DNA of 64,000 bases, from NCBI GenBank assembly GCA_001179505.1, contig CDMY01000553.1, positions 124,001-188,000 of the forward strand. The letters are read 5' to 3'. The translations under genes were made by a program, and so were the position numbers. This document shows positions 25,854-39,825 of this stretch, piece after piece. The DNA comes from Vitrella brassicaformis CCMP3155 (taxonomy: Eukaryota > Protista > Chromerida). Below the pieces are notes generated by a model. That model made no database searches. It saw only the letters and a program-made list of their open reading frames with translations, and was not told the origin of the DNA. Numbering within the stretch: the first letter of the stretch is position 1; every line of letters starts with the position of its first letter.

Positions 25854-28411
25854 TCACTTCCTCTCGACGTGGTTGTAGTCGGTGTAGACCCAGCGCCTCT
25901 CCAGCCCATACAGCCGATACGCTCCATAGCCACACACAAGAGACAGTACCAGGGGGATGCGCCACAGCGCAGCCCCGCCCATGGTGGACATCAGGAAGCG
26001 GCTCAGCAGGCCGCCGGGGGGAAAGAGGAAAGCCATGGCCGCCACTGACGTGAGGGCATCGAGACCAAGACCGATCGACAAGACGGTGGTGAGGTAGCGG
26101 AGGACCCTGGTGATGGCATACCTGCAGCCGTGAAGACACTGCCGTGTGTGTATGTGATGGGACTCCGTGTCTCTGTCTGTCTGTCTGTCTGTCTGTCTGC
26201 GGTGACTTACGCTTTCCTGCAATGGGGCAGTATTTGGTGTGAGACTCCCACCGGTCGAAGAGCTTCCTCCGGTCGGTCATGAGAGGCCCCAGCTGCCCGG
26301 TGCTGCCCTTCCATAAGGGCTTCCCTCCGGCGTGATTCATCAGCCACCGACGGAAGGACCTCACCGCCGTGTCGGCGGCAGCCGGCATGTAATAGGCCCG
26401 GTCAAATTTCTCGAGACCTGTACACACACATGCATGCTGTCATGTCAACCAACGCATGAAGCTTGGTGGGATGGGATTTGGCGGCCGTTCGCCATGCATC
26501 AGATCAGCTGACCGTCTTGGTGTTCCCTCAGCCTGCGTTCCTGGTAGTGGACATGCATATTGTCTCCGTCTGTGACAGCAAGACTCTCCAGGTGGTCATC
26601 CCATCGCAGCGGAGACGTTCTGCAAACACACACCCACACATGGCACACACACACACATACACACACACACACACATGACACATACATTCACTGAGCGTCG
26701 CTGACGTAGACATGCTCTCACACACATCGGCCGCTTGCGAAAGGGCACCGTTGCGGGGAAGCGCGTGAACAGATAACTCTCCCCTGGGGCGGACGGCACA
26801 GCGTATGCCACCAGATAAAACCTGTGCCCGTCAAGCTTGCCGCTTCTAAGGGGCTTGGTGATCTTCGGAGCCATGCCGATCTTGGACAACAACCTGGCAA
26901 TGGGAATGGGAGGAGCACGATGCAGTGCGGGTGTGTGCAGCAAGGGAATCGGCTGACTTGATGATGGGCTTCTGCTTCAGCCTTTCGACAACCGGTGACA
27001 GATCAAACTCGTAGTACAAGAGGCAAGGGGGCATGAACCTGATGCGCGTCGTGAGGCCGGCGCCTCCGAGATCTTGTAGGGATGTGACGACGAAGCCGTC
27101 GCCGGTCAGATTGTCCAGCTTCATTGCAATCGGCCCGGCTTGGTCACGGTTGCCCTGGCGCAAGGATTACACGCAAACACTTACCTGACTCTTCTCAGTA
27201 TGGCTGGCTGGTCCGACGTACCTGTATCCCGTGATGGGCGAATGGCACGTGCGATGGGTCGCCAACATCTTCAACCTGCAGCCATTGACACAAGCATGCA
27301 CGACCCACACGAGCCTCAGGTGGCTGCCTGGCGTGTGAGTGTGTTGGTTGTGATGTCTGTGGGTCTCTCACAAGTGTGTCATAGTTGTAGTGCAAGACCC
27401 GAAAGAAGAGGCCGTCGTCTTTTCTGTTGATCAGCTCGGGCACTGCATCCAGCTCAGCCACTGTCGCCGGCTCTACCTCTGTAGAAGCTGCCCAACCCTC
27501 CCTCGTGCTGCAGACACACCAACATGCATACATACATGTCTGCGGGCTCCGATGTGCCCACCCCACCTGTCAGGGAATATCCAGACGAGTGAGTCGGCCT
27601 CCTTGCACGGCACTGTCTGGAGGCACGCCCGCTTGTTCTTCCTGGCGGCCTTCTGCGCCTTGGCCTCAACTTGAGGGATCTTCGTGCACGCTCCTGTCCC
27701 ATCGAACTCCCAGCCATGGTAGGTGCAGTGCAGCTTGCCGTCTTCGCTGATGCGGCCCTCAGACAGCGGCGCCAGGCGGTGCGGGCAAGCGTCCTTAGCC
27801 GCGACGAACTTGTGCGTCGCCTCGTCCCACCACACCACGAAGTGCTCATTGAGCACGGTGAACTGCCGCGGTTGCTTCTTGTCCAGATCACTTGCAATCG
27901 CCACGGGATACTGCACAAGACAAGACAAGACAAGACAAGAAGGCAGCGGTCGATTGTGTGTGTGAGCGGGAGCCTGTGTGGCTCATTCGTCTGCCTACCC
28001 ACTGTCGCCACCAATCGAAGGTGCCGCCATCCGCCTTGTCCGAAGCCTCAGACGCCTGCAAGGCATCAATGAGGCGTGCAAGAAGAGCGGCCGCGTGGTT
28101 CATCCAGCCTGAGGACGGATCATTGCTCACCGCTGGTGTGAATGACAGCTCGATGCTCTCTGACCGAGGCGGCGTTATCTTGGCTGGCGGCGATGGTACG
28201 GTCAGCACTGCAGATGGCAGCGCAGTGCGACGCACCGACCTCTTTCCCGAGCTGCCAAACAGCTGGCCTGCAGTGAAGGCAACGAACATACAAACAAAAT
28301 GGCGATGGTTGCATCTGACCGACCTGGCTTGATTGCGTGATAAGCAAGACATCCTTGCAGAGCAAATGTCAAGAGTGCTGCGCTGCCGCAGACCACACGC
28401 TGCTCCTTCAT
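25854..28411 (-). CDS. Plastid-targeted Rieske non-heme iron oxygenase, pheophorbide a oxygenase / PTC52 / Tic55 family; apparent 1-nt frameshift near the 3' end
   Basis: Rieske motif DACPHRLAPLSEGRI..LHCTYHGWEFDGTGACTKIPQ; mononuclear iron motif EDVGDPSHVPFAHHG; F.PPC; Y.MP.AAD.AV..FRRWL; DRWESHTKYC; C-terminal hydrophobic helices. The N-terminus MKEQRVVCGSAALLTFALQGCLA followed by a Ser/Arg/Pro-rich stretch suggests a bipartite plastid presequence. Confidence 0.9.
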
Positions 28412-28627: not shown

Positions 28628-31600
28628 ATGGAGTCCGTACTGCATTTGTTCGTCGGCCTTGCAGCTGCCTGTCTGTGGCTTCCCTGGGCCGCGGCGCAGC
28701 AGGATGTGTGGCTCTTGAGTATCTGCTCGGGTGACGTGAAGGTCGGTGGACTGGGGAACAAATCCAAGCCGCTCGTCGACCTGGGTAAGTGGCACTAGCA
28801 AGGCAGGACCACCTCCGTTTGTCGCGTGTTCATTCCTGCATGCAGCTCTTTCTGAGATCAACAACCGCACCGACATTCTCAATGGCTATGAGCTCAAGGT
28901 TGAGCATGTCGGTGGAGTCGACAGACAGACAGACAGACAGACAGACATAACAGGTGGATTCTCAATGATCTGTGTCTGTGATGTCTGTGATGTCGCCTGT
29001 ATGTCTGTCTGTCTGTAGGTCGACTCCGATTGTGATCCAGGTCACATTATGATATAGAGCTACAGACAAAAGCACCCATTGTTCCTTGCAATGTGGGCTG
29101 TTGTGTCTGTGTGTTTCAGTGGAAGGCTCTTTCCGTGTTACCAAGGCTCTAAAGGAAGGTCCCCCGAAGGTGAGCAGCCACAGGCATGCTCAGTCACGCG
29201 CAAATACCCATCATTCTCTGTGCTGGGTGCTTGCATCTCAGGTAGGAATCATGGGCCCCTGCTACTCGCCCGTGTGCGAGGTCGTCAGCCCCGTTGCGCG
29301 GAGCTATAACCTAGTCATTAAAGTGAGACGAACATGGACCGTCTCTGGCGGTACGGCTGTATGTGTCTGTGTCTGTGGTCAGGCTGCTAGTTGTGTGATA
29401 GGTGAATTCAGGTGTGCACGATGGCCCAAGGGAGGCGCGGAGACGAGTTCCCAACACATACATGTTTGTGTGCGAGCTGTATGTGTGTGCTTTTGGTTCT
29501 AGCGATGAGGAGAAGTATCCATTGTTCACGCGCATCTTTCCCCCCACGGTACGCAATGGATTTGGTGGCTGACATCCGCCATATGCATCCCTTCGGCGTG
29601 CACCTGCAGGGAGAGATGGTTGTGTACGCAATGGTCCAGCTGGCCGGCATGTTTAAATGGGGACGCTTCACATTCGTGACGCAGGCAAAGCACCGGGCCA
29701 GGCAAGAACGTTTTACATGATTTGAATTCTGTTTGGTGTCTCAACTTGAAGGACATCGAGATATGTCTCTTGTTGGCCGGGGGAGTCCATCAGACCTTAG
29801 CTGCAACATTCCCAAATTTCGATCATGTCGCCACCCTACTCATGGCGGTATACAAGAGCAGAGGCCATCAACCACTTTGACAGTCGCCTTGTTTATCCCT
29901 CACACAGACGCACGATGACGCTTATAATGTTGTGGCAGAACTTCCTTCTTATCGGCCGCGTATCCTCGTGCTATCGGCCTACGAGGACTTTGCAGTCAAC
30001 TTCTTCTGCGCTTTGTACCAAGCTGGCATGTATGGCCCGTCAAGTAATCTGGTTATGCTCTCGCCCACACACTGGTGTGACGATGTAATACATGAGCGGC
30101 TTGGCAAGCTGGCGTTGAAGTCGAGCTATGTATGTATGCAGGTGGAACTCAAACTTTATCGAGGAGCTCGTAATGGTTACAACTGCACCGTTGCAGAAAT
30201 ACTTGAGGTAAGCACCGCCGTACAGGCAGGCAGGTCGAAAGGCATGGTCTCGATGCTAAAGGTGCGACAGCCAGCTGAATCCTTCTCTCACTTCGATGTT
30301 CGATTTGCAGGGTGCCAGCAATATCATAGGCATATCGATGGCCGGACGGCAGCCAAGCGACGACCCACATGGGCTTTCCGGACGAAAAATCAACGATGTA
30401 GTCAAGAAGGGGGGCATGCGCAACACAAATCGCCAGTGCATGGGAATCCTTGCATGCCCCTCTATACATCAGATAATGGCTGACTACCAAACAGCCTGCT
30501 CGGTCTCCACGGACGGCTGCCATGTTGGGGCAGGTGAACGGACATGATTCTTTCTGCAGTCATGACAATTCTATTTGGAGGTTACTCTTATGATCCTTCT
30601 GCAGGTTACTTTTATGATTCTGTCTGGTGAGCACTGCCTTCCTGTCGATCGTGCGCATCGACATACAGATGCCCTGATGCAGGTCGTGGGCGAAGGTGCT
30701 GGATGACTGGTTCCTTAGTGGAGGCTGAGAACGAATGCATGTCTCGTGCTGTAAGGACAGTATGGATGGTCTTTGTAGGACTCTTGCCGACCTTGAGAGC
30801 CCCAACAGCACAACTGCGGAGTGGATGTTTAATCAGACCATCAGTCAAGTGAACACATGGACGGATTTTCTCCCCAACCCTACGCGCACAGATGCGTTTG
30901 TGTGTTCAGTCCTTTTTGGGCACACCGGGCCTAATATCCTTTAAAGGGACGTCCCCCGGCCCTGGCGACGCCGTGGGCCAGCTAGACATCAAACAAACAA
31001 GGGTACCGTATCCCTTGTATAGCCGAGACGTGTTTCCTCTTGTTGTCATGTTCTATTTGTACCGTGTCGCTGCCTCTGTGCCTGCAGAATTCCAACGACT
31101 ATAGTCTAATTAGCAACTGGCTGCCTTCGACGGCAAGCTACAGGCAAGGTCGCTATGCACGAAAAAGCCCACTGGAAGAAGTTTCTTCCGGGCAGCTTTC
31201 GAAGCTACTTTGAGTGGAACGACGGCAGCACTTTCAATCCTTTGGCTAGCCCGCCAGGCACTGTGCCTGGAGACACGCCGCCAGAGTGCCCAGCTGGCAA
31301 TTACGTCAACGAAACGGTTCGGTTCGGTCGTCAGCGGAGGGACACTGCTGTCAAATTCACAAGCATTGGAAGCGTTGTCCCTGTGTGTCTGTGTGTCTCC
31401 GGCAGGGTGACTGCGTCGCTTGTCCGACTGGCTCGGCCAACAGCCAGCCTAACGTACGCTTGGAGTGTGTGACGTGTCGTCCTGGATTCTATCAGAATGA
31501 GACGGGCCAGGTGGAATGCGAAACCTGTCCGGTAAGCGCCCATTCATCCACTGGCGTCTCGGCATCCTGAACTGAGTGTCATGGTACGTGTGGCTCGACT

Positions 31601-34600
31601 GACCTATTCAGCTGGGGACATACTCTGGGGCTGCGGCCGAGACTTGTATTCCCTGTTCGCCAGGCTTCCACCAGGACTTGGCTGGTCAGAGCGAGTGCAA
31701 GGTCCGACATACCAACACGCACACGTGGCCGGCACGGGCCGTAAGTGCGACCCGTCTTGAACATTAGGCCTGCTCACCCGGCTCATTCACTGACACTCAA
31801 GGGAAGGTGCTTTGCGACCTGTGTCCGAAGGGCACCTTCACAGCTGAGCGGAACAGCAGTGTGTGCGAGGCATGCCCGCCGTACAAGGTATACACATTTC
31901 TCTCTTCATTCATCGAGACACAATGTGATGTGACGGCACTCTCACATTGTATTTGCAAAGACCACACTTGTGAGAGGCGAGATATCGGTGGACAAATGCA
32001 CGTGTGACGAGGGTTCCTATCTTGACGTCAAGAACGACCGATGCAAAGGCAAGCAGACGGCAATGTTGTCGTGCAATCTATGTATGTATGTGCCGGGTTG
32101 GTTGGTTGCTGGCTGCAGACTGCGACGAGTACCTTGAATGTCCCGGCTCGTCTGCATTGCCGAGAGTGAAGGAGAATTACTGGGCGGCCCTGGAGGATGA
32201 CGTTAGCGCCTTTTCAGCGTTGGATGTCTACGAATGCAGAGAGGCGGGAGCGTGCCTCGGTAAAAATCGCTGCAAAAGGATCGTTCGAGGCCGCCCTGCT
32301 TCCTTATTGATACGGCACGATGTGTGTATGCAGGTGGGTCACCCGACCCCTCCCTCGCCGACCAATTCCCCATGTGTGCTCCGGGCCGGGAGGGGATTGC
32401 ATGCAGCCTGTGCAGCGACGGGTACTACAAAGCCGGCAAAGACTGTGATCCGTGCGGCAGTGGTAATGCGGGCACTGCGCCGCTGATAGCGGCAGTCTTC
32501 CTTGTGTTCTTTGGGGCCCTCGTCTTCCACTTATTCGTAGACACAATTGCCCTCGCGATGTCTCCCTGATTGCTTTGTGGCTTATGAGTGCTGCCTTCTG
32601 GATGTTTGCAGGTCAATTCCCCTCTCACGCGGAAGCTTGCCGTCACTGTCAACATTTCGCTTACAGTGGGGATGATGATCAGCTGTAAGCTCCTCTAGAC
32701 ACTGAAGCAAGAAGCGCGGCTGCATTGGAAGTGTGGATTGCTGTCAGTCTTCCAGTCGCTGTCGATTGTCGGCACATACAAGATCGGCTTTCCCGACGAG
32801 ATTTCAGCAATTCGTAAGTCAGTCATGGGCACAGCCACCTGCAGCACGAAAAATACCCATCGCTCCTGTCTCACTTATGTGTATGCAGTAAAGTTTTCTC
32901 GCATCTTCTGTGAGCACCGCGCACTGCCGACAGCAGCGCCGAGAGGATGACATTGTGTCCACGCCATGAGTACGTGTTTGTGTGTCAGTGTTCGACGTCA
33001 AGTTCCTTCGCATTGGCTGCGTCCTCGGCAGCGACCCGTTGTCAGACTACGCAATCCGCCTGGCCATGGCACCCATGCTCGCAGCGGTGTTCCTGATCAA
33101 CTGTGGCATCGCCAAGCTTACATATCGATACCTCGTCGGTAGGGAGACATGAAATGCATCATGTTCATCTCTGAGAGGATGCATCGCTGCAGGTCCGATG
33201 ATCCTGAAAGACGCCGAAGGAGGGGGTGGCGAAGCCAAGCCCTGGCTAATTGATCGCTTCACCGGCCATCGTCAGGACAGCGACTCACCCGTGCCCAAAT
33301 CGCTGAAGAAATACTCCTTCATGACAGGTGCGCCAAAGGTAGCATCATGTGGTGTGAACCAGACACACTCACCATCGCCCTCGGCTGCAGGTGGAACCCT
33401 GGTTGAGGGCGTCGCAACTAAGGACGGTTCTTGTGAGATGGTGGCGGTGCAAGATATCAACGATGAAGACCAGCAAAACCACAACGTCGACAACGATGTT
33501 AAGAAGAGCGACGACACGGTGCCACAAGACGCGAACGAAGCCGATGATGCAAGACCCAGAAGAAAGAGCGTTGTATTCGGCCAGGCGAAAGGAGACAACG
33601 CAGGCAATCCAAAGGAAAGCCAACGCTCAGGAACAGACACAAAAAGCAGCCAGAAAAGCAGTCAGAAAAGCAGCCAGCAGCCGGGGTCAGACGGCGATGA
33701 CTTAAAGAAGAAGGACAAGCCGTGCAAAGACCAGCTCGGACGCGCGTCGATCGCGTCGATTCCGTGGCAGCAGTCGAAGGTAAGCGGCGTCATTCGTTGG
33801 GTGCGTGTGTCATCCGCTTACGTATTTCTTTCGACATGCAGTACGTGTTGGATCGGAAGAGGTACATGAGGTCGATCCTCGACTGGCGTACGTGGGCCAA
33901 GAGCGACGCCATGTCGCTCGACAAGACGCTCAACTCCATCGGCATGCTGACTGTGAGCACGCAGGATGAGTGGAAATACGAAGGCATTCGCATGCTGATT
34001 GCGTCCGTGTGCGTGTCTTCTGCTTGCCAGATGATTCTGTACATTTCCTTTGTGGCCAACGCCTGCCTGCCATTTCAATGTGTGTCGAACTCCAGCGGGC
34101 GCTCAACGATCCGAGAGTGAGCTAACCGGTGTGCGCATGACTGGTGATTGAACAAGTCATGGATCTCTGTGCAGGTACCCCTCCATAACTTGCGACTCTG
34201 ACGAATAAAGAACCGCCTTTATGCCACTGGGATTGCTGGGAATGCTCGTATACGTGGTATGCTAGCACGGAATATCACTGATTCGACTAACGTGCTTGTC
34301 GATCCCTCACCCCGTCTCACATGTTTCCATGCAGATTGGGCTCTTCTCCTTCTTCGCATATGCTAGTATCATCGCGCCGTGGCACTTCGCCAAGCCCAGC
34401 TACAGAACGAGATTCAGATTCCTGGTCTTCAGATTTAGGTGGGGAATTGTGTCTCCACGTCTCCCCAGCGTGTGCACTGCCTCTCTCTGCCTGCGTAAAG
34501 ACCGGATGTATATTGGTGGGGTGTGGTGCTGCTGGCTCGGAACGCTCTGCTGGCTACTGTTACCGTGATGGAGCCAGGCAAGTCACAGATACAAGCAAGT

Positions 34601-36764
34601 GTACACAGAATGGACACCTGCACACTGTGACTAGATGGGTTTGCCTGTTCTTGTGTGTCTGGCCAGATGACGGTGGGAGCTGTTCGAGTCGTCAGTATAC
34701 ACACACAAGCATCTTTGTACAGGCTAATGCGTGTGTCAGGCTTAATGCAAATCTTTGTCACGGTCCTGATCCTCCTCGTCTCCGCTTCTGCACAGGTACG
34801 TACACTGCTTGCCTGGTGAGCACCCTCCCAAAGTCTTGTCTGTCTGGACTTAATTAAGATATTCTGGTGGCCCTGGTCATCCGTCGCCAACAACTGTAAC
34901 CAAACACAGGAAGAGCCTCGCTTCCGCGTATGTGTGTTGCTGTGTGCAGTCCTGGATGTGTTTCTCCTTATGTGCCTGACTCTAATCTCCGTGGCCGGAT
35001 CCGTCTTCATCGAGAAAAACACAAATGAAAAGGTGCCAAGTGTCCCACACATTGATACATCCAAGTGTGAGGGTGGTGCAGTTCTTTTCCGGCGCGATAA
35101 TCTTCATCCTCTCGCTTTGCTTCTTCAGTGTCGTCCTGGGCGTTGTAATGATATTGCCTTTGTGCACGTCATTTGTCGCTCCACAAAACGGAGAGGTTCT
35201 CTGCGTGTTGTTCCTTTCTTTGCAGATCATTCCGTTCGCCTCACAATTCAGTGAAAAGTTCCAAAAGAACGAGGAGCGGAAGGTCCTTGGACTGGCCTTC
35301 GACTTCAGAATCGTGAGCGAGCCTAACCGCCAGACACGTCATGCATCGTTGTGGATCACAGCATGTCTCTCCATGTGTGTGTGTGTGTACCCAGGTGGGG
35401 ACTGCAGCCTCTCAGATGACGACCGAGGCAGTGATGGGTGAGCTCAATCAGGTGCCCGCAGTCGATCTGTACAAGCTCCGATCGTCCATCAACATGATCA
35501 AGGTGGGCTGATCGGCGACACATACATTGGCGCATTCATGAGTAGTGACTTTGGTGGAGTCTTTTTCTTGGTCGTAGATGGAGGTGATCCCTCACATCAG
35601 GTGAGAAATACGCGACTACGATCGCTGAAGTGGAGTGGTCTACCTCTACCGCAAGCCGCTCGTTGGTTCGCTGCCGTCAGGTACATAAGTGCCCTGAGAG
35701 GCGTGTTGAGCACTGAAGGTGAGTAGGGACCACTTCGATGCGGTTGATCGACTGATTCCCTGCCTTGTGTGCGTGAATGTTCTTCTTTAGGCTACCTCGA
35801 CGAGCGTCTCGACTCCCACGCATTTGGGAGGGACATGCCCACAGCAAAGTCAGCAGGCAGCAGAGAGGGCATGCTGTGTCTCAGTTTGTTCATAAGAAGC
35901 ACTGCGAGACCATGACATGGATTCTTGTCCAGGCGCCTCTCCTACCGAAATACAACAGTGCTGGAGGAGGATGCTGCCTCGGAGTACGAAGTCGATCAAG
36001 CTGTCGAGCACTTCAGGATGGTAAGACCGACAGAACAACACACAATACCTCCAATGCAGCCCGTCCACGTGTCTCTGCCCTCCTGGCATGGATGCAGAAG
36101 CGTGCGATGTCCGATCCCGAGCTCCACCTTGACGACGGACTCGGAGGGACTGTCGAGCAGGGCACTTCCATGTCTCCGGTCATCCAGAAGAAGCGCAGCG
36201 TGGATGACGGATCCCCTCGCAGCGTCACCTCCAAGCGCCCGTCGGTTGGGCAGATCCTCGCAGCCATCAACTCACCGCAGATGAATCAAGAGCGGCAAAA
36301 GAAAAGGCATTCTGTAACGAGGATGTCAAAGCTGATGTCTCTCGACGACAAGAAGGACCTGGCCATGGCATGGGTGAGCAAGAGAGACAGGCGAAATGGC
36401 CCACATGATGTCTCACCTTATTCGTCAGGCCAAGACAGAGCGAAATGTTGACGAGTGCGGGAAAGATGAGGTGCCTGACGATGATGAGCTTCCAATCGTT
36501 AAGCTGCCGCTGGGTAGGGTTGAAACATGGATCGCTTGATGGTGGCCTCTTGATCATGTGCTTTGTGGGGCCCAGGCAACATCGAGTTCGATGAAAAGGG
36601 GGTCGTTAAAGTTGCTACAGATATTCTGCGTGATCTGACCACAGAGGCAGACTCACCGCGGATGAGAACTCTCAAGGCATTCAGGTGCGCGGAATGTCAC
36701 GGGAACAGCTGTGCGTGCATCCGCTGTCTGTGCTACCAGGACGGAAATGGACCGCGACTTTTGA
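28628..36764 (+). CDS. Large receptor-like membrane protein: signal peptide, GABA-B-type Venus flytrap (ANF_receptor) domain, GCC2/GCC3 (ephrin-receptor-like) Cys repeats, multipass membrane region; many short exons, 3' end approximate
   Basis: MESVLHLFVGLAAACLWLPWAAA signal; PLVDLALSEINNRTDILNGYELKVEHVDSDCDP, IMGPCYSPVCEVVSPVARSYNLVI, SDEEKYPLFTRIFP and RPRILVLSAYEDFAVNFFCALYQAGMYG parallel GABBR1/2; repeats CPAGNY..CVACPTG, CRPGFYQNETGQVECETCP, CDLCPKGTF; CAPGREGIACSLCSDGYY; then several hydrophobic helices including YISFVANACLPFQC and RFRFLVFRFR. Confidence 0.82.
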
Positions 36765-37881: not shown

Positions 37882-39825
37882 TCAGTTGTCCTGTTCGCCC
37901 TCGCCCTCGTCGAGTTTGGGTGCCAGGTAGAAGCACAGGCTGCCGGCGTTGTCACGGTTGTCCAGCAACGTGTACTTGACGCGCACAGGGGTGCCCTCGT
38001 TCATGCCTACACACACACATGGATGGATGGATGGATGGGTGCGTGTGGAGTTCATTGCAGGCACACGTGGCGTGTGCTCACTGAGTTCGACGAAGTCCGT
38101 GAGGGGTGTGGCACGTGTGAAGTAGTTGAGGTACCGCAGGGCGAACGACAACTCGACCGCCTCCTTGACCACAACCGTCACGTTCTCGGATTGCTGAACA
38201 GACGTCCACACAACACCATGCACCAGTGTGTGTGTGTGTGTGTGTGGAGTGGGGACGGTCCATTTGAATCTCACGTTTTCGTCCTTCTTGGCCTTCTTGG
38301 GTTTGAGGAAGACCTCCCCCTCGCCGACGTCGCCCTGGACCGAAAACGTGATGCCGTTCCTATTGCACGATATCTTGACTGAAGGAACGAATCACACCAG
38401 ACACACCAGACAGACAGACAGACAGAGAGACAGACAGAGCGAGCGTGGTGGGCATGTAGGTCTATGAGCGTGGTGTGTGGTGTGTGTTGTGTCGATTCCG
38501 TCTGACTGGTGTCGCCGAATCCCGCCATGTCCCTGCAGATGCGCTGGAAGTCGCTGGCGGGTATCTTGGCGGTGCACTGGTAGTCGGTGTCCTGAGGGAG
38601 GCCGAGCTGCTCGGTCTCGATGTCCATGAGCTTCATCTTGATGCGGCTGCTGCGGTCGGGCTTCCAGCTGTCCTTGCGGATTTTCTCGTCCACGTTGGCC
38701 AGGGTCTCCTTCTCGTCGTCATCGCCGTCATCTAGGTCGTCGTCGTCGTCAAACTCCAACTCGTTCGTCTCTGCACGCACGCACAGACGGACACACATCA
38801 ATGTCACACCCATGTGTGCCGCGTCTTGTTTCTCTCTCCCTCGCTGTGTATGTGTGGGGGGGTGTGATGCGATGCGCACGGACGCACCTCCGTCCTCCAT
38901 CTTGACGTCTTTGGTGCTGGGCTTGCTCTTGCCCTCGTCCTCATCCATCTTGTCCTCCTCCTACAACACAACACAACACAACACAACACACACAGGAATC
39001 AAGCGCCCATAAACAAATCGGCGCCCGCTCCCGTGTCGACCCGTCCGTCCATCTTACTTTCTCGTCGGCATCCTCGTCCTTGACATCGTCGTCCTCGTCC
39101 TTCTCGTCCTCGCCGTCCTCACCCTTGTCCTTCTTGGCCTTCTTCTTGCCGCCCCCCGTTTTGCTCACGGTCGGCTTCTTGCGGCAGTCCTTCTTCTTGT
39201 CGGCCTCTATCTGCCGCAGCCTGGCGCGCACCAGCTGGCTCGGGGTGTCGAAAACGAACTCCACGTAGTCGGTGTCGGGGTGGGCCAGGAGCGTCAAGCG
39301 GTCCTCGCTGCCCATCAGACGCAGGATCTTGGTCACGTTGGCCATGCTGCTCACACACACGCACACACACACACACAGAGGGAGAGGGATGGGCGTGTGC
39401 AATGTTCGAATGCGAGTGTGGGTGTCGGTTTGGTGTTGTGTGTGTGGGTGGTGTGTGTGGTGTGGTGTGGTGTGGTGTGGTGTGTGTGGTGCGGTCACCG
39501 ACATACTTGAATCCGAGGACGTATTCCTTGTCGCATCTATAGCGTTTGAAGCAGGAGGATGAGTCCATGGCGTTCATCTCCAACACTACCAGCGACACGT
39601 GGCTGCTGTCCATCGCCTGCAAACGGATCCCAGTCGAACCTGCACAAAACACACACACGCACACACACACACACACATACCCACACGCACATTTCGCAAG
39701 TGTGTGTGGAATTGTCCCTCCCGCTGCTGCTCACTGAGCGTGAAGTTGACGTCGGTGCACAGCTCCTTGACCGCATCGAAGATCTTCTTCAGGATGACGC
39801 CCTGCGATATGACCGCCTCGAACAT
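37882..39825 (-). CDS. PCNA: Proliferating cell nuclear antigen with a long charged insertion; multi-exon
   Basis: MFEAVISQGVILKKIFDAVKEL, GIRLQAMDSSHVSLVVL, MKLMDIETEQLGLP, ASDFQRICRDM..FGDT, VELSFALRYLNYFTRATPL, FYLAPKL. Confidence 0.96.

What the first reader, a model, noticed from the sequence alone, without database searches (positions are those of the whole stretch)
28628..36764. GABA-B-like Venus flytrap domain fused to a CRMP-type Cys-repeat/multipass membrane module
The ectodomain closely follows GABA-B receptor motifs (ALSEINNRTDILNGYELK..DSDCDP; cf. ALEDVNSRRDILPDYELK..DSKCDP). It is followed not by a recognisable class C 7TM domain but by GCC2/GCC3 repeats, a C..GR.G..C..C..GY module and a multipass region with FQC and RFRFL motifs, interrupted by a long polar loop (33198-33780). 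That back half resembles alveolate cysteine-repeat modular proteins, which in Toxoplasma and Tetrahymena are tied to triggering rhoptry or mucocyst discharge. The chimera suggests a small-molecule sensor coupled to secretion or channel-like signalling in a lineage with little canonical G-protein machinery.
Basis: partly seen in the sequence, partly recalled or inferred. Interest (0 to 1): 0.8.

Follow-up and report, generated by a model that had tools for sequence, protein, structure and literature searches.

The report
GABA-B-like flytrap on CRMP-type membrane core
A coral-associated alga related to malaria parasites carries a gene that joins a neurotransmitter-receptor-type ligand-binding "flytrap" to the nine-helix membrane module of the proteins that trigger parasite invasion, a combination shared by a whole family in its relatives, although this particular copy contains a premature stop codon.

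Summary
On the + strand from ATG 28628 lies one gene of more than 45 exons. It encodes a signal peptide, a GABA-B-type Venus flytrap, three Pfam Ephrin_rec_like repeats plus further Cys modules, and a nine-helix membrane module. A disordered polar loop of about 175 residues sits between helices 3 and 4, on the cytoplasmic side.

The membrane module is not a class C 7TM domain and not a canonical TRP channel. Models of two relatives match no solved structure. It matches protist and animal clusters carrying Ephrin_rec_like, DUF7630 and sub-threshold PF06011 "TRP". By eye it shares motifs with published Toxoplasma and Chromera CRMP cores.

An intact Vitrella paralog (CEM29294.1) has the same architecture: ANF_receptor 3e-31, best solved relatives GABA-B R2/R1 at 2e-23. 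Dinoflagellate relatives put other binding-protein sensors (Peripla_BP_5/6, Bmp, OpuAC) on the same chassis. Some add a C-terminal TIR domain.

New caveat: this copy has an in-frame TAA (34206-34208) in a transcript-supported, conserved exon, so it may be a young pseudogene.

Function as a ligand-controlled transducer or channel is inference. The scan holds no other note on this family.

The parts
28628..28730 (+). Exon 1. It holds the start codon and a signal peptide (28628-28696, hydrophobic core then AAA|QQ). Donor GT at 28731.
   Evidence: Direct reading. Intron 1 (28731-28806, 76 nt, GT..AG) restores the frame into the flytrap. This boundary was inferred, not seen in transcripts.
28807..31181 (+). 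Venus flytrap (ANF_receptor type, GABA-B-like), spread over about 17 short exons. These include a 22-nt exon (29019-29040, VDSDCDP).
   Evidence: The exons align collinearly with residues 9-392 of the Vitrella paralog P0029. In P0029 this region scores ANF_receptor E 3.2e-31 and GABA-B R2/R1 E 2e-23/3e-21. For the window's N-terminal exon, the only PDB hits are five GABA-B1 entries, at E 0.67-1.6. Transcript contig pieces lie at 30682-30848.
30683..30848 (+). Flytrap exon region with unsettled splicing. One transcript contig keeps 30682-30848 whole and so carries an in-frame TGA at 30726-30728. Another removes 30696-30778 (83 nt), which shifts the frame.
   Evidence: Canonical stop-free alternatives exist (for example introns 30696-30755 or 30710-30760) but were not seen in the rows shown.
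31182..31316 (+). Bridging exon. It holds the end of the flytrap (SYFEWNDGSTF) and the start of the Cys-rich stalk (ECPAGNYVN) in a single exon.
   Evidence: Transcript contig piece 31193-31315. It aligns with P0029 residues 393-433 at 47% identity.
31406..31887 (+). Three Ephrin_rec_like (GCC2/GCC3-type) repeats, one per exon: 31406-31531, 31612-31701 and 31768-31887.
   Evidence: Pfam PF07699 with E 5.5e-9, 7.8e-9 and 5.5e-8, all above the cut-off. Transcript piece 31766-31884.
31961..32259 (+). Two further Cys modules: 31961-32048, and 32119-32259 with the motif ...NYW...YEC..GACL.
   Evidence: They are collinear with P0029 residues 546-631. Transcript contig record 3 joins 31766-31884 to 32117-32250 through an 89-nt exon. 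The same pre-membrane pattern occurs in the published Chromera CRMP Cvel_14651 (by eye).
32334..32536 (+). Membrane-proximal EGF-like/DUF7630 module (32372-32464) and helix 1 (32477-32539), in one exon.
   Evidence: Pfam DUF7630 E 0.0024 and EGF_laminin E 0.019. In the HMMER search of 1.84 billion representatives, this exon finds the Vitrella paralogs P0003 (E 8e-11) and P0002 (E 1e-15).
32612..33138 (+). Helix 2 (32633-32812, conserved Q in FQSLSIVG), the outer loop FD..C..DP (32988-33050) and helix 3 (33051-33137).
   Evidence: A profile of dinoflagellate relatives only hits piece 32970-33149 at E 1.9e-6. The conserved columns Q60, D89 and C97 of alignment A1 are present. The exon end at 33138 is supported by a transcript joint.
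33193..33779 (+). Polar, low-complexity loop of about 175 residues between helices 3 and 4, predicted to be cytoplasmic and disordered. It has one in-frame intron, 33328-33390.
   Evidence: Exons 33193-33327 and 33391-33779 lie in one 2584-nt spliced contig. The equivalent loop of the paralog has pLDDT under 50. The loop is absent from dinoflagellate relatives. A long polar loop sits at the same place in Chromera CRMP Cvel_14651.
33842..34116 (+). Amphipathic pre-helix, helix 4 (N..G motif, 33914-34081) and the first Cys of the outer hairpin (FQC).
   Evidence: Transcript joints. The region is 35-50% identical to P0003/P0029. The A1 columns N143, G146 and C166 are present.
34175..34256 (+). 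Exon holding the second hairpin Cys (YPSITC), an in-frame TAA at 34206-34208, and the start of helix 5.
   Evidence: The exon is contiguous in the transcript contig and identical in two DNA runs. The reading frame is fixed on both sides by homology. The TAA aligns with W in paralog P0028. An AG at 34209-34210 could serve as an in-frame alternative acceptor, but using it would delete the conserved Cys.
34335..35144 (+). Helix 5, the cytoplasmic motif RFRFLVFRF, and helices 6-9. This stretch includes a GC..AG intron and a 6-nt microexon (34667-34672, ATGACG).
   Evidence: All joints are transcript-supported. The frame stays open. The A1 near-invariant positions R-F-L, R (LLARN), Q, PW and N..D are present. 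Profile hits have E 2.6e-4 and 0.058.
35226..36539 (+). Cytoplasmic tail in several exons. About 311 nt of introns between 35503 and 36020 are not resolved. The probable stop is at 36537-36539.
   Evidence: Transcript joints 35312|35395, 36019|36097 and 36372|36428. Homology to P0029 runs up to about residue 1245. More than 15,000 stop-free intron combinations fit the hidden part, so it is left open.

Best explanation
The locus is one gene for a receptor-like membrane protein of about 1,500 residues.

Shown here:
- The order of parts is: signal peptide; an extracellular Venus flytrap homologous to those of GABA-B receptors; a rigid Cys-rich stalk (three Ephrin_rec_like repeats, two more Cys modules and a membrane-proximal EGF-like/DUF7630 module); then a nine-helix membrane module.
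- The module has a disulfide-type outer hairpin and conserved polar residues inside the helices.
- It has a disordered loop between helices 3 and 4 and a long polar C-terminal tail. With the N-terminus outside and nine helices, both lie on the cytoplasmic side.
- The membrane module belongs to a widespread eukaryotic family. Pfam sees this family only as sub-threshold PF06011 'TRP'. By architecture and motifs it is the CRMP core of apicomplexans.
- In Vitrella and in dinoflagellates the same stalk-plus-nine-helix chassis carries interchangeable binding-protein sensors, and sometimes a cytoplasmic TIR domain.

Inferred:
- A small ligand (an amino acid or similar) closes the flytrap, probably in a dimer.
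- The stalk passes the movement on to the nine-helix module.
- The module changes its cytoplasmic face, or opens an ion (Ca2+) path.

Caveat: this particular copy has an in-frame TAA between helices 4 and 5. It is therefore either a recently disabled paralog or is expressed through a minor isoform.
For: One gene:
- Bridging exons and collinear alignment to a single paralog over more than 40 exons, with canonical splice sites.
- Spliced transcript contigs.

Flytrap:
- Paralog P0029 scores ANF_receptor E 3.2e-31.
- Its best solved relatives are GABA-B R2/R1 at E 2.3e-23 and 3.3e-21, against mGluR at 6e-9.
- The window's N-terminal exon hits only GABA-B1.

Stalk: PF07699 three times.

Membrane module:
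- AF2 models of P0018 and P0029 reach pLDDT 78 and pTM 0.76, with nine helices.
- There is no solved homolog.
- ESM-Atlas matches by shape reach TM 0.7-0.88, to clusters carrying Ephrin_rec_like, DUF7630, PF06011, LRR and TIR_2.
- PF06011 is the only Pfam family hit by more than one member: 6 of 13, best E 9e-7.

Modular sensors: Peripla_BP_5/6, ANF_receptor, Bmp and OpuAC, plus a C-terminal TIR.

CRMP link:
- Published CRMPs have Cys repeats plus nine helices, with no solved homolog (PMC9815656, PMC9670195).
- Collinear motif matches by eye to the TgCRMPA/B and Cvel_14651 cores.

Calcium link: PF06011 proteins of fungi are tied to calcium homeostasis (PMC9600462, PMC8618638, titles and abstracts only).
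Against: - No ligand, dimer, ion flux or localisation was tested.
- PF06011 scores stay below Pfam's cut-off (26.4 against 28.5 bits).
- The short loops between helices 6 and 9 leave no room for a TRP-type pore loop, and no TRP channel appears in the fold searches.
- CRMP homology has no statistic behind it.
- The window's own flytrap was tested only exon by exon; single exons give no Pfam hit.
- The in-frame TAA sits in a conserved, transcript-supported exon. Transcript contigs also show unproductive forms at 30683-30779. This copy may therefore make no full-length protein.
Confidence: 0.6

Rival explanations
1. This copy is a young pseudogene or a truncated allele. The architecture is real, but the locus makes no full-length receptor. 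At most it gives a flytrap-stalk protein ending after helix 4.
For: - An in-frame TAA at 34206-34208 lies six codons after a nearly invariant Cys. The frame is fixed by homology on both sides.
- The sequence is identical in two DNA runs and one transcript contig.
- Both transcript forms seen at 30683-30779 are unproductive.
- No gene model containing this exon exists in the protein collections, whereas two paralogs are annotated.
- Two near-invariant prolines of the family are replaced.
Against: - Apart from the TAA, a stop-free model with canonical splice sites can be threaded through more than 40 exons.
- More than 400 codons downstream of the TAA stay open, with most family-invariant residues intact.
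- The gene is transcribed and its many tiny exons, a 6-nt one included, are spliced correctly.
- Only part of the joints was shown (14 joints were hidden), so a productive isoform may exist.
Confidence: 0.45
2. It is a divergent class C G-protein-coupled receptor, a GABA-B homolog whose 7TM domain has drifted beyond recognition.
For: - The flytrap is specifically GABA-B-like.
- Weak GPCR rows appear in Foldseek for the Vitrella model, at E 1-5.
- PANTHER calls TgCRMPa 'GPCR-like', according to PMC9670195.
Against: - No 7tm_3 hit in the paralogs or in 13 relatives, even at E up to 1.
- Nine helices, not seven.
- GABA-B and GPR156 membrane domains score only Z 4.5-4.7 and TM 0.14-0.18, which is within noise.
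- A Cys-rich Ephrin-type stalk is not found in GABA-B receptors (established knowledge).
Confidence: 0.03
3. Two adjacent genes were read as one: a secreted flytrap protein and a separate CRMP-like membrane protein.
For: No single transcript contig spans the whole locus. Transcript depth is zero at 32300-32499 in the one run that covers the gene.
Against: - Exon 31182-31316 contains both the flytrap end and the first Cys repeat.
- No start, stop or long gap lies between the two parts.
- One paralog protein aligns collinearly across the junction.
- Transcript-derived proteins of Vitrella (P0003) and of dinoflagellates (P0018, P0039) carry sensor, stalk and membrane module together.
Confidence: 0.04
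4. The nine-helix module is not a signal transducer. It is a transporter or a membrane anchor, and the flytrap serves nutrient capture or adhesion rather than signalling.
For: - The sensor domains on this chassis (Peripla_BP_5/6, Bmp, OpuAC) are the classic partners of uptake systems in bacteria (established knowledge).
- Yeast PF06011 proteins were named flavin carriers (PMC9600462 abstract).
- Conserved polar residues inside the helices fit a substrate path as well as an ion path.
Against: - C-terminal TIR domains in several relatives point to signalling output.
- CRMPs act in triggering exocytosis, not in uptake (PMC9670195, PMC9815656).
- No transporter fold stands out in the searches; the best Foldseek E is 0.049 at TM 0.17.
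Confidence: 0.15

Closest known systems
Cysteine repeat modular proteins (CRMPs) of Apicomplexa, ciliates and Chromera (TgCRMPA/B, PfCRMP1-4, Cvel_14651)
   Same: - Cys-rich EGF-like and Ephrin-receptor-like repeats sit directly before a nine-helix core.
- There is no solved homolog.
- A long polar loop lies between helices 3 and 4 in the Chromera member.
- Motifs are collinear by eye: Cys module then helix 1; IGFP/IAFP; a Cys-about-20-residues-Cys outer loop; F.FL..(G/R)(F/Y)...(Y)WW......R(N/K/E); and P(W/F)....N.L(D/E).
- Sources: PMC9815656 text and supplements and alignment A1.
   Different: - Described CRMPs carry adhesive ectodomains (MAR, Kringle, lectin, EGF), not a ligand-binding flytrap.
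- They act as an A/B heterodimer at the rhoptry secretion site of parasites.
- Vitrella is a free-living alga, and nothing is known about where its protein sits.
- Homology was not scored with a tool.
GABA-B receptor subunits 1 and 2 (class C GPCRs)
   Same: - The flytrap is homologous over its whole length: paralog E 2e-23, residues 8-386.
- The overall logic is the same as in class C receptors such as mGluR and CaSR: flytrap, then Cys-rich spacer, then multi-pass domain.
   Different: - The membrane domain has nine helices and is unrelated to 7tm_3.
- The spacer is made of Ephrin_rec_like repeats.
- No G-protein link is implied.
Fungal PF06011 'TRP-like' proteins (Flc1-3, Pkd2, TrpR)
   Same: - The membrane module gives repeated Pfam matches to PF06011 positions 220-410: 6 of 13 relatives, best E 9e-7.
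- UniRef names paralog P0028 'TRP C-terminal domain-containing protein'.
- These fungal proteins are tied to calcium homeostasis (abstracts).
   Different: - All scores are below Pfam's cut-off.
- The fungal proteins have a different N-terminal domain, with no flytrap or Ephrin repeats.
- Whether either group is a true channel is not shown here.
Cnidarian and sponge LRR/DUF7630 nine-helix proteins, and protist Ephrin_rec_like/PF06011 proteins (ESM Atlas clusters, uncharacterised)
   Same: The same predicted membrane fold, with TM-score by query 0.80-0.82, and the same membrane-proximal DUF7630 module.
   Different: The ectodomains are LRR, PMP repeats or Cys repeats only. No binding-protein sensor was recorded for these clusters.
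Other flytrap fusions: receptor guanylyl cyclases (ANF receptors) and ionotropic glutamate receptors
   Same: A type I binding-protein fold is recruited as the extracellular sensor of a membrane transducer (established knowledge). They share the Pfam family PF01094.
   Different: The transducers are different: a single helix plus cyclase, or a pore-loop channel. Neither has the nine-helix module.

Membership tests
ANF_receptor / class C-type Venus flytrap (PF01094) | Pfam PF01094 match above the gathering score | tested here: inconclusive
The window's exons were searched one by one and gave no hit at E up to 0.1, because they are too short. The paralog P0029, to which the exons align collinearly, scores 109 bits, E 3.2e-31, covering profile positions 7-350 of 353.
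ANF_receptor / class C-type Venus flytrap (PF01094) | Closest solved relatives are GABA-B receptor flytraps | tested here: met
   P0029 residues 1-400 score GABA-B R2 2.3e-23 and R1 3.3e-21; the next group, mGluR, scores 6e-9. P0003 residues 1-210 give the same ranking. For the window's N-terminal exon, all five PDB hits are GABA-B1 at the correct position, but E is only 0.67-1.6.
Class C GPCR | 7tm_3 seven-helix domain after the flytrap | tested here: not met
   No 7tm_3 hit in P0003, P0029, P0028 or in 13 membrane modules at E up to 1. The models have nine helices. GABA-B and GPR156 7TM domains appear only at noise level.
CRMP (cysteine repeat modular protein) | Cys-rich EGF-like or Ephrin-receptor-like modules directly before the membrane core | tested here: met
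   Three PF07699 repeats and a DUF7630/EGF_laminin-like module share an exon with helix 1. The CRMP definition is taken from PMC9815656.
CRMP (cysteine repeat modular protein) | Nine transmembrane helices | tested here: met
   AF2 models of the Vitrella paralog and of a dinoflagellate relative have nine helices. Hydropathy agrees. The window has exons for each helix.
CRMP (cysteine repeat modular protein) | Sequence homology of the core to recognised apicomplexan or Chromera CRMPs | tested here: inconclusive
   Only comparison by eye with the TgCRMPA/B and Cvel_14651 cores printed in the supplements of PMC9815656. At least six collinear motif matches were seen, with no score.
CRMP (cysteine repeat modular protein) | Role in regulated exocytosis (rhoptry or mucocyst discharge) and A/B heterodimer | not testable with these tools
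   This needs localisation and knock-outs.
PF06011 'TRP' (fungal Flc/Pkd2-type) | Pfam match at or above the gathering score (28.5 bits) | tested here: not met
   The best score is 26.4 bits, E 3.8e-6, for P0003/P0029. Six of 13 relatives match below the cut-off, with a best E of 9.2e-7 on the cut-out module. This is probably distant kinship, not membership by Pfam's rule.
Canonical TRP / polycystin channels | Six-helix fold with a pore loop between the last two helices | tested here: not met
   No TRP or polycystin chain appears among the Foldseek or VIA matches of either model. The loops between helices 6 and 9 are only 4-18 residues long.

The most novel reading that the evidence does not exclude
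The CRMP-type nine-helix module is a general receptor chassis of myzozoans.
- Chromerids and dinoflagellates plug at least five families of small-molecule binding domains onto it: the GABA-B-type flytrap, Peripla_BP_5, Peripla_BP_6, Bmp and OpuAC.
- Different cytoplasmic outputs follow: a disordered loop or tail, or a TIR domain.
- If so, these are ligand-controlled transducers or channels of a kind not described before.
- They would be natural, ligand-defined models for how apicomplexan CRMPs turn an outside signal into rhoptry discharge.
Probability: 0.4. Interest if true: 0.8.

Novelty: new variant of a known kind. Interest (0 to 1): 0.6.

Why it matters
[quoted passage not shown] How their nine-helix core signals is unknown, and no ligand is known for them.

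A family in free-living relatives carries recognisable small-molecule sensors on the same core, and in dinoflagellates a TIR output. That makes the question testable. A candidate ligand class can be guessed from the sensor, the flytrap can be purified, and the transducer can be assayed.

The family is also a second, independent solution to the layout of class C receptors: flytrap, Cys-rich spacer, multi-pass domain. It arose in lineages thought to be poor in G-protein signalling.

It also points to how coral-associated algae and dinoflagellates may sense amino acids, nucleosides or osmolytes.

Tried and rejected
- Single-exon Pfam and PDB sequence searches of flytrap and membrane exons mostly gave nothing, because the exons are 7-60 residues long.
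- The word-index protein search limited to the conserved helices of P0003 found only P0003 itself.
- The look-up of encoding contigs had no record for P0003.
- tblastn of the dinoflagellate ANF_receptor proteins P0025 and P0027 against the window found only the Cys repeats, not the flytrap. Their flytraps are a different subgroup.
- I enumerated the hidden introns of the tail (35395-36020) from the contig-length constraint. More than 15,000 stop-free solutions came out, so I left the tail open.
- I looked for a way to splice out the TAA while keeping the conserved Cys. No canonical site allows it.
- Literature searches for a flytrap-CRMP or flytrap-dinoflagellate receptor found nothing relevant in the held library. 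Templeton and Pain 2016 on chromerid extracellular proteins is not held.
- No CRMP-named cluster appeared in the ESM Atlas.
- I joined exons only inside scripts, to check frames and stops. The joined protein was sent to no search or folding tool.

Full report
WHAT THE WINDOW IS

The window is eukaryotic DNA with about 57% G+C and many short GT..AG introns. That fits what I found: the closest proteins are annotated Vitrella CCMP3155 paralogs. I did not prove the identity independently.

GENE STRUCTURE AND TRANSCRIPTION

One run (X1, guessed to be RNA) and a second run (X2) hold spliced contigs that are 99-100% identical to the window. Two DNA runs hold the unspliced stretch.

From 33138 to 35395 every exon boundary is given by a transcript joint with GT..AG ends. 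The exceptions are one GC..AG intron and a 6-nt microexon, ATGACG, at 34667-34672.

It is interrupted only by a 63-nt in-frame intron.

Upstream, transcript pieces cover 30682-30848, 31193-31315, 31766-31884 and 32117-32250. No contig spans 32300-32499.

A splice-aware alignment of the Vitrella paralog P0029 to the genome threads 44 exons from 28836 to 35699. All have canonical splice sites, and most boundaries coincide with the transcript joints. Exon 1 (28628-28730) supplies a start codon and a signal peptide.

ONE GENE OR TWO

- Exon 31182-31316 holds both the last flytrap motif and the first Cys repeat.
- Exon 32334-32536 holds both the last Cys module and helix 1.
- One paralog aligns collinearly over the whole locus.
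- The transcript-derived proteins P0003 (Vitrella), P0018 and P0039 (dinoflagellates) contain sensor, stalk and membrane module together.

The reading as separate transcripts is therefore unlikely.

THE FLYTRAP

Single exons are too short for Pfam.

The window's N-terminal exon finds only GABA-B1 flytraps in the PDB, at the right position, but with E 0.67-1.6.

The paralog P0029 (CEM29294.1, 1518 residues) settles the family:
- ANF_receptor scores E 3.2e-31 over nearly the whole profile.
- Its best solved relatives are GABA-B R2 (2.3e-23) and R1 (3.3e-21), fourteen orders of magnitude ahead of the mGluRs.

The window's exons are 26-59% identical to the paralog's flytrap, block by block.

THE STALK

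Three Ephrin_rec_like repeats pass Pfam's cut-off. The membrane-proximal module gives weak DUF7630 and EGF_laminin hits.

THE MEMBRANE MODULE

A HMMER search of 1.84 billion representatives with the exon for the Cys module and helix 1 found only 16 proteins. The informative ones are Vitrella paralogs. The window's own product is not in the collections.

Word-index searches with the paralog and with a dinoflagellate relative brought in eleven dinoflagellate relatives of 1400-1855 residues.

Their aligned membrane modules (A1) share these features:
- C..C before helix 1
- Q in helix 2
- FD..C..DP in the first outer loop
- N..G in helix 4
- two Cys in an outer hairpin
- FRFLFFRF.P..Y.FG...LLRN
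- Q in helix 7
- PW
- N..D in helix 8

The window has nearly all of them. A profile built from the dinoflagellate sequences alone finds the window's exons in the right order.

AF2 models of P0018 residues 720-1090 and of P0029 residues 668-1182 reach pLDDT 78 and pTM 0.76. Both show nine helices and a small outer beta hairpin. In the Vitrella protein the loop between helices 3 and 4 is disordered.

With the N-terminus outside and nine helices, the polar loop and the C-terminus are cytoplasmic. This fits the TIR domains that follow helix 9 in P0017, P0018 and P0023.

WHAT THE MODULE IS NOT, AND WHAT IT RESEMBLES

- Foldseek against the PDB gives nothing: best E 0.049 and 1.1, TM below 0.3.
- The exhaustive VIA search tops out at Z 6.5, which is noise for helical bundles.
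- Class C 7TM chains score Z 4.5-4.7, and no TRP channel is listed.
- No 7tm_3 hit was found anywhere.
- By shape, the module matches ESM Atlas clusters at TM 0.7-0.88. These come from haptophytes, chlorophytes, ciliates, cnidarians and sponges. Their members carry Ephrin_rec_like, DUF7630, LRR, TIR_2 and, in 12-25% of members, PF06011.
- PF06011 is the only Pfam family matched by more than one of the 13 modules: six members, best E 9e-7, all below the cut-off.

THE CRMP LINK

The two CRMP papers define CRMPs by EGF-like or Ephrin-receptor-like Cys repeats and nine helices. They note homologs in Dictyostelium and 'many diverse CRMPs' in Chromera, and state that no homolog is solved.

I read the TgCRMPA/B and Cvel_14651 core sequences in the supplements and compared them by eye with A1 and with the window. 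The following agree in order and spacing:
- the pre-membrane pattern (..NY...Y.C..GACLG..C..G..G..C..C..Y....C..C)
- the IGFP/IAFP motif
- the GC motif before helix 3
- a long polar loop after helix 3 (in the Chromera protein)
- the Cys-to-Cys outer loop
- the F.FL..(G/R)(F/Y)...YWW......R motif
- the P(W/F)...N.L(D/E) motif

It is a lead with some weight, not a scored test.

THE FAMILY AROUND IT

On the same stalk and nine-helix chassis, relatives carry these sensors, all above Pfam's cut-offs:

| Sensor | Relative |
|---|---|
| Peripla_BP_5, two copies | P0017 |
| Peripla_BP_6 | P0018-P0020, P0022 |
| ANF_receptor | P0025; P0027 from Polarella glacialis |
| Bmp/PnrA-like | P0024 |
| OpuAC | P0026 |

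Vitrella has at least three paralogs: this locus, CEM29294.1 and CEM02220.1.

THE DEFECT IN THIS COPY

In exon 34175-34256 the frame reads YPSITCDSDE, then TAA (34206-34208), then RTAFMPLG.

- Both sides are in frame with the paralogs. The Cys before the stop is nearly invariant in the family. The stop aligns with W in CEM02220.1.
- The exon is contiguous in the transcript contig, and the DNA runs show no other letter at that place.
- The only way round the stop is an AG acceptor just after it. Using it keeps the frame but deletes the conserved Cys.
- In the flytrap, one transcript contig retains 30696-30778 and so carries a TGA at 30726-30728. Another removes exactly that stretch, 83 nt, and shifts the frame. 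Stop-free alternatives exist but were not among the joints shown.
- Everything else is intact.

I put the chance that this copy makes no full-length protein at about 45%.

MECHANISM

Shown: the domain order, the topology, and the modular swapping of sensors and outputs.

Inferred from class C receptors, ANF receptors and the predicted CRMPA/B dimer: ligand-induced closure of a probably dimeric flytrap is passed through the rigid stalk to the nine-helix module. Conserved polar residues inside the helices (Q, N, R, Q, N, D), together with the calcium phenotypes of fungal PF06011 proteins (abstracts), make an ion path possible. The TIR outputs make a conformational or oligomerisation signal equally possible. 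Neither was tested.

NOVELTY

The proteins exist in databases under automatic names. I found no paper in the held library that describes a flytrap or other binding-protein sensor on a CRMP-type core. The review most likely to mention it is not held.

I rate this a new variant of a known kind and of real interest to apicomplexan and protist biologists. The interest is tempered by the stop codon in this copy and by the lack of any functional test.

RULES FOLLOWED

- Read laying was given 6,000 letters.
- The joined spliced model and the CRMP sequences from the paper were not sent to any tool.

Noticed in passing
window 34578-34739: A 6-nt microexon (ATGACG, 34667-34672) is supported by two transcript runs. 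A GC..AG intron precedes it. The gene also has a 22-nt exon (29019-29040).
   Followed up: partly
window 28912-28950 and other introns: (GACA)n and (GT)n/(CA)n microsatellites fill several introns. The same short repeats recur elsewhere in the genome: DNA contigs of other loci lay on 31378-31400 and 35368-35391.
   Followed up: no
window 27473-27928, minus strand: An ORF with a Rieske-type iron-sulfur motif pair (C.H ... CTYHGWEF) lies just upstream of the gene, on the other strand. It was not examined.
   Followed up: no
P0017 1396-1482, P0018 1088-1186, P0023 1097-1204: Dinoflagellate relatives of the nine-helix module end in a cytoplasmic TIR domain directly after helix 9. In P0023 the TIR_2 score is above Pfam's cut-off.
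   Followed up: partly
ESM Atlas cluster, row 8: In one cluster with Ephrin_rec_like plus PF06011 (61 members), Nucleocytoviricota is the commonest recorded phylum. Some giant viruses may therefore carry this membrane module.
   Followed up: no
window 33391-33779 (polar loop): The disordered loop contains a basophilic-kinase-type site (RPRRKSV) and Ser/Lys-rich repeats (SSQKSSQKSSQ). It may be a regulatory phosphorylation region. This is speculation.
   Followed up: no
window 38271-39245, minus strand: A PCNA gene with an acidic/basic insertion lies downstream. The scan has already noted it (s1-242896).
   Followed up: no
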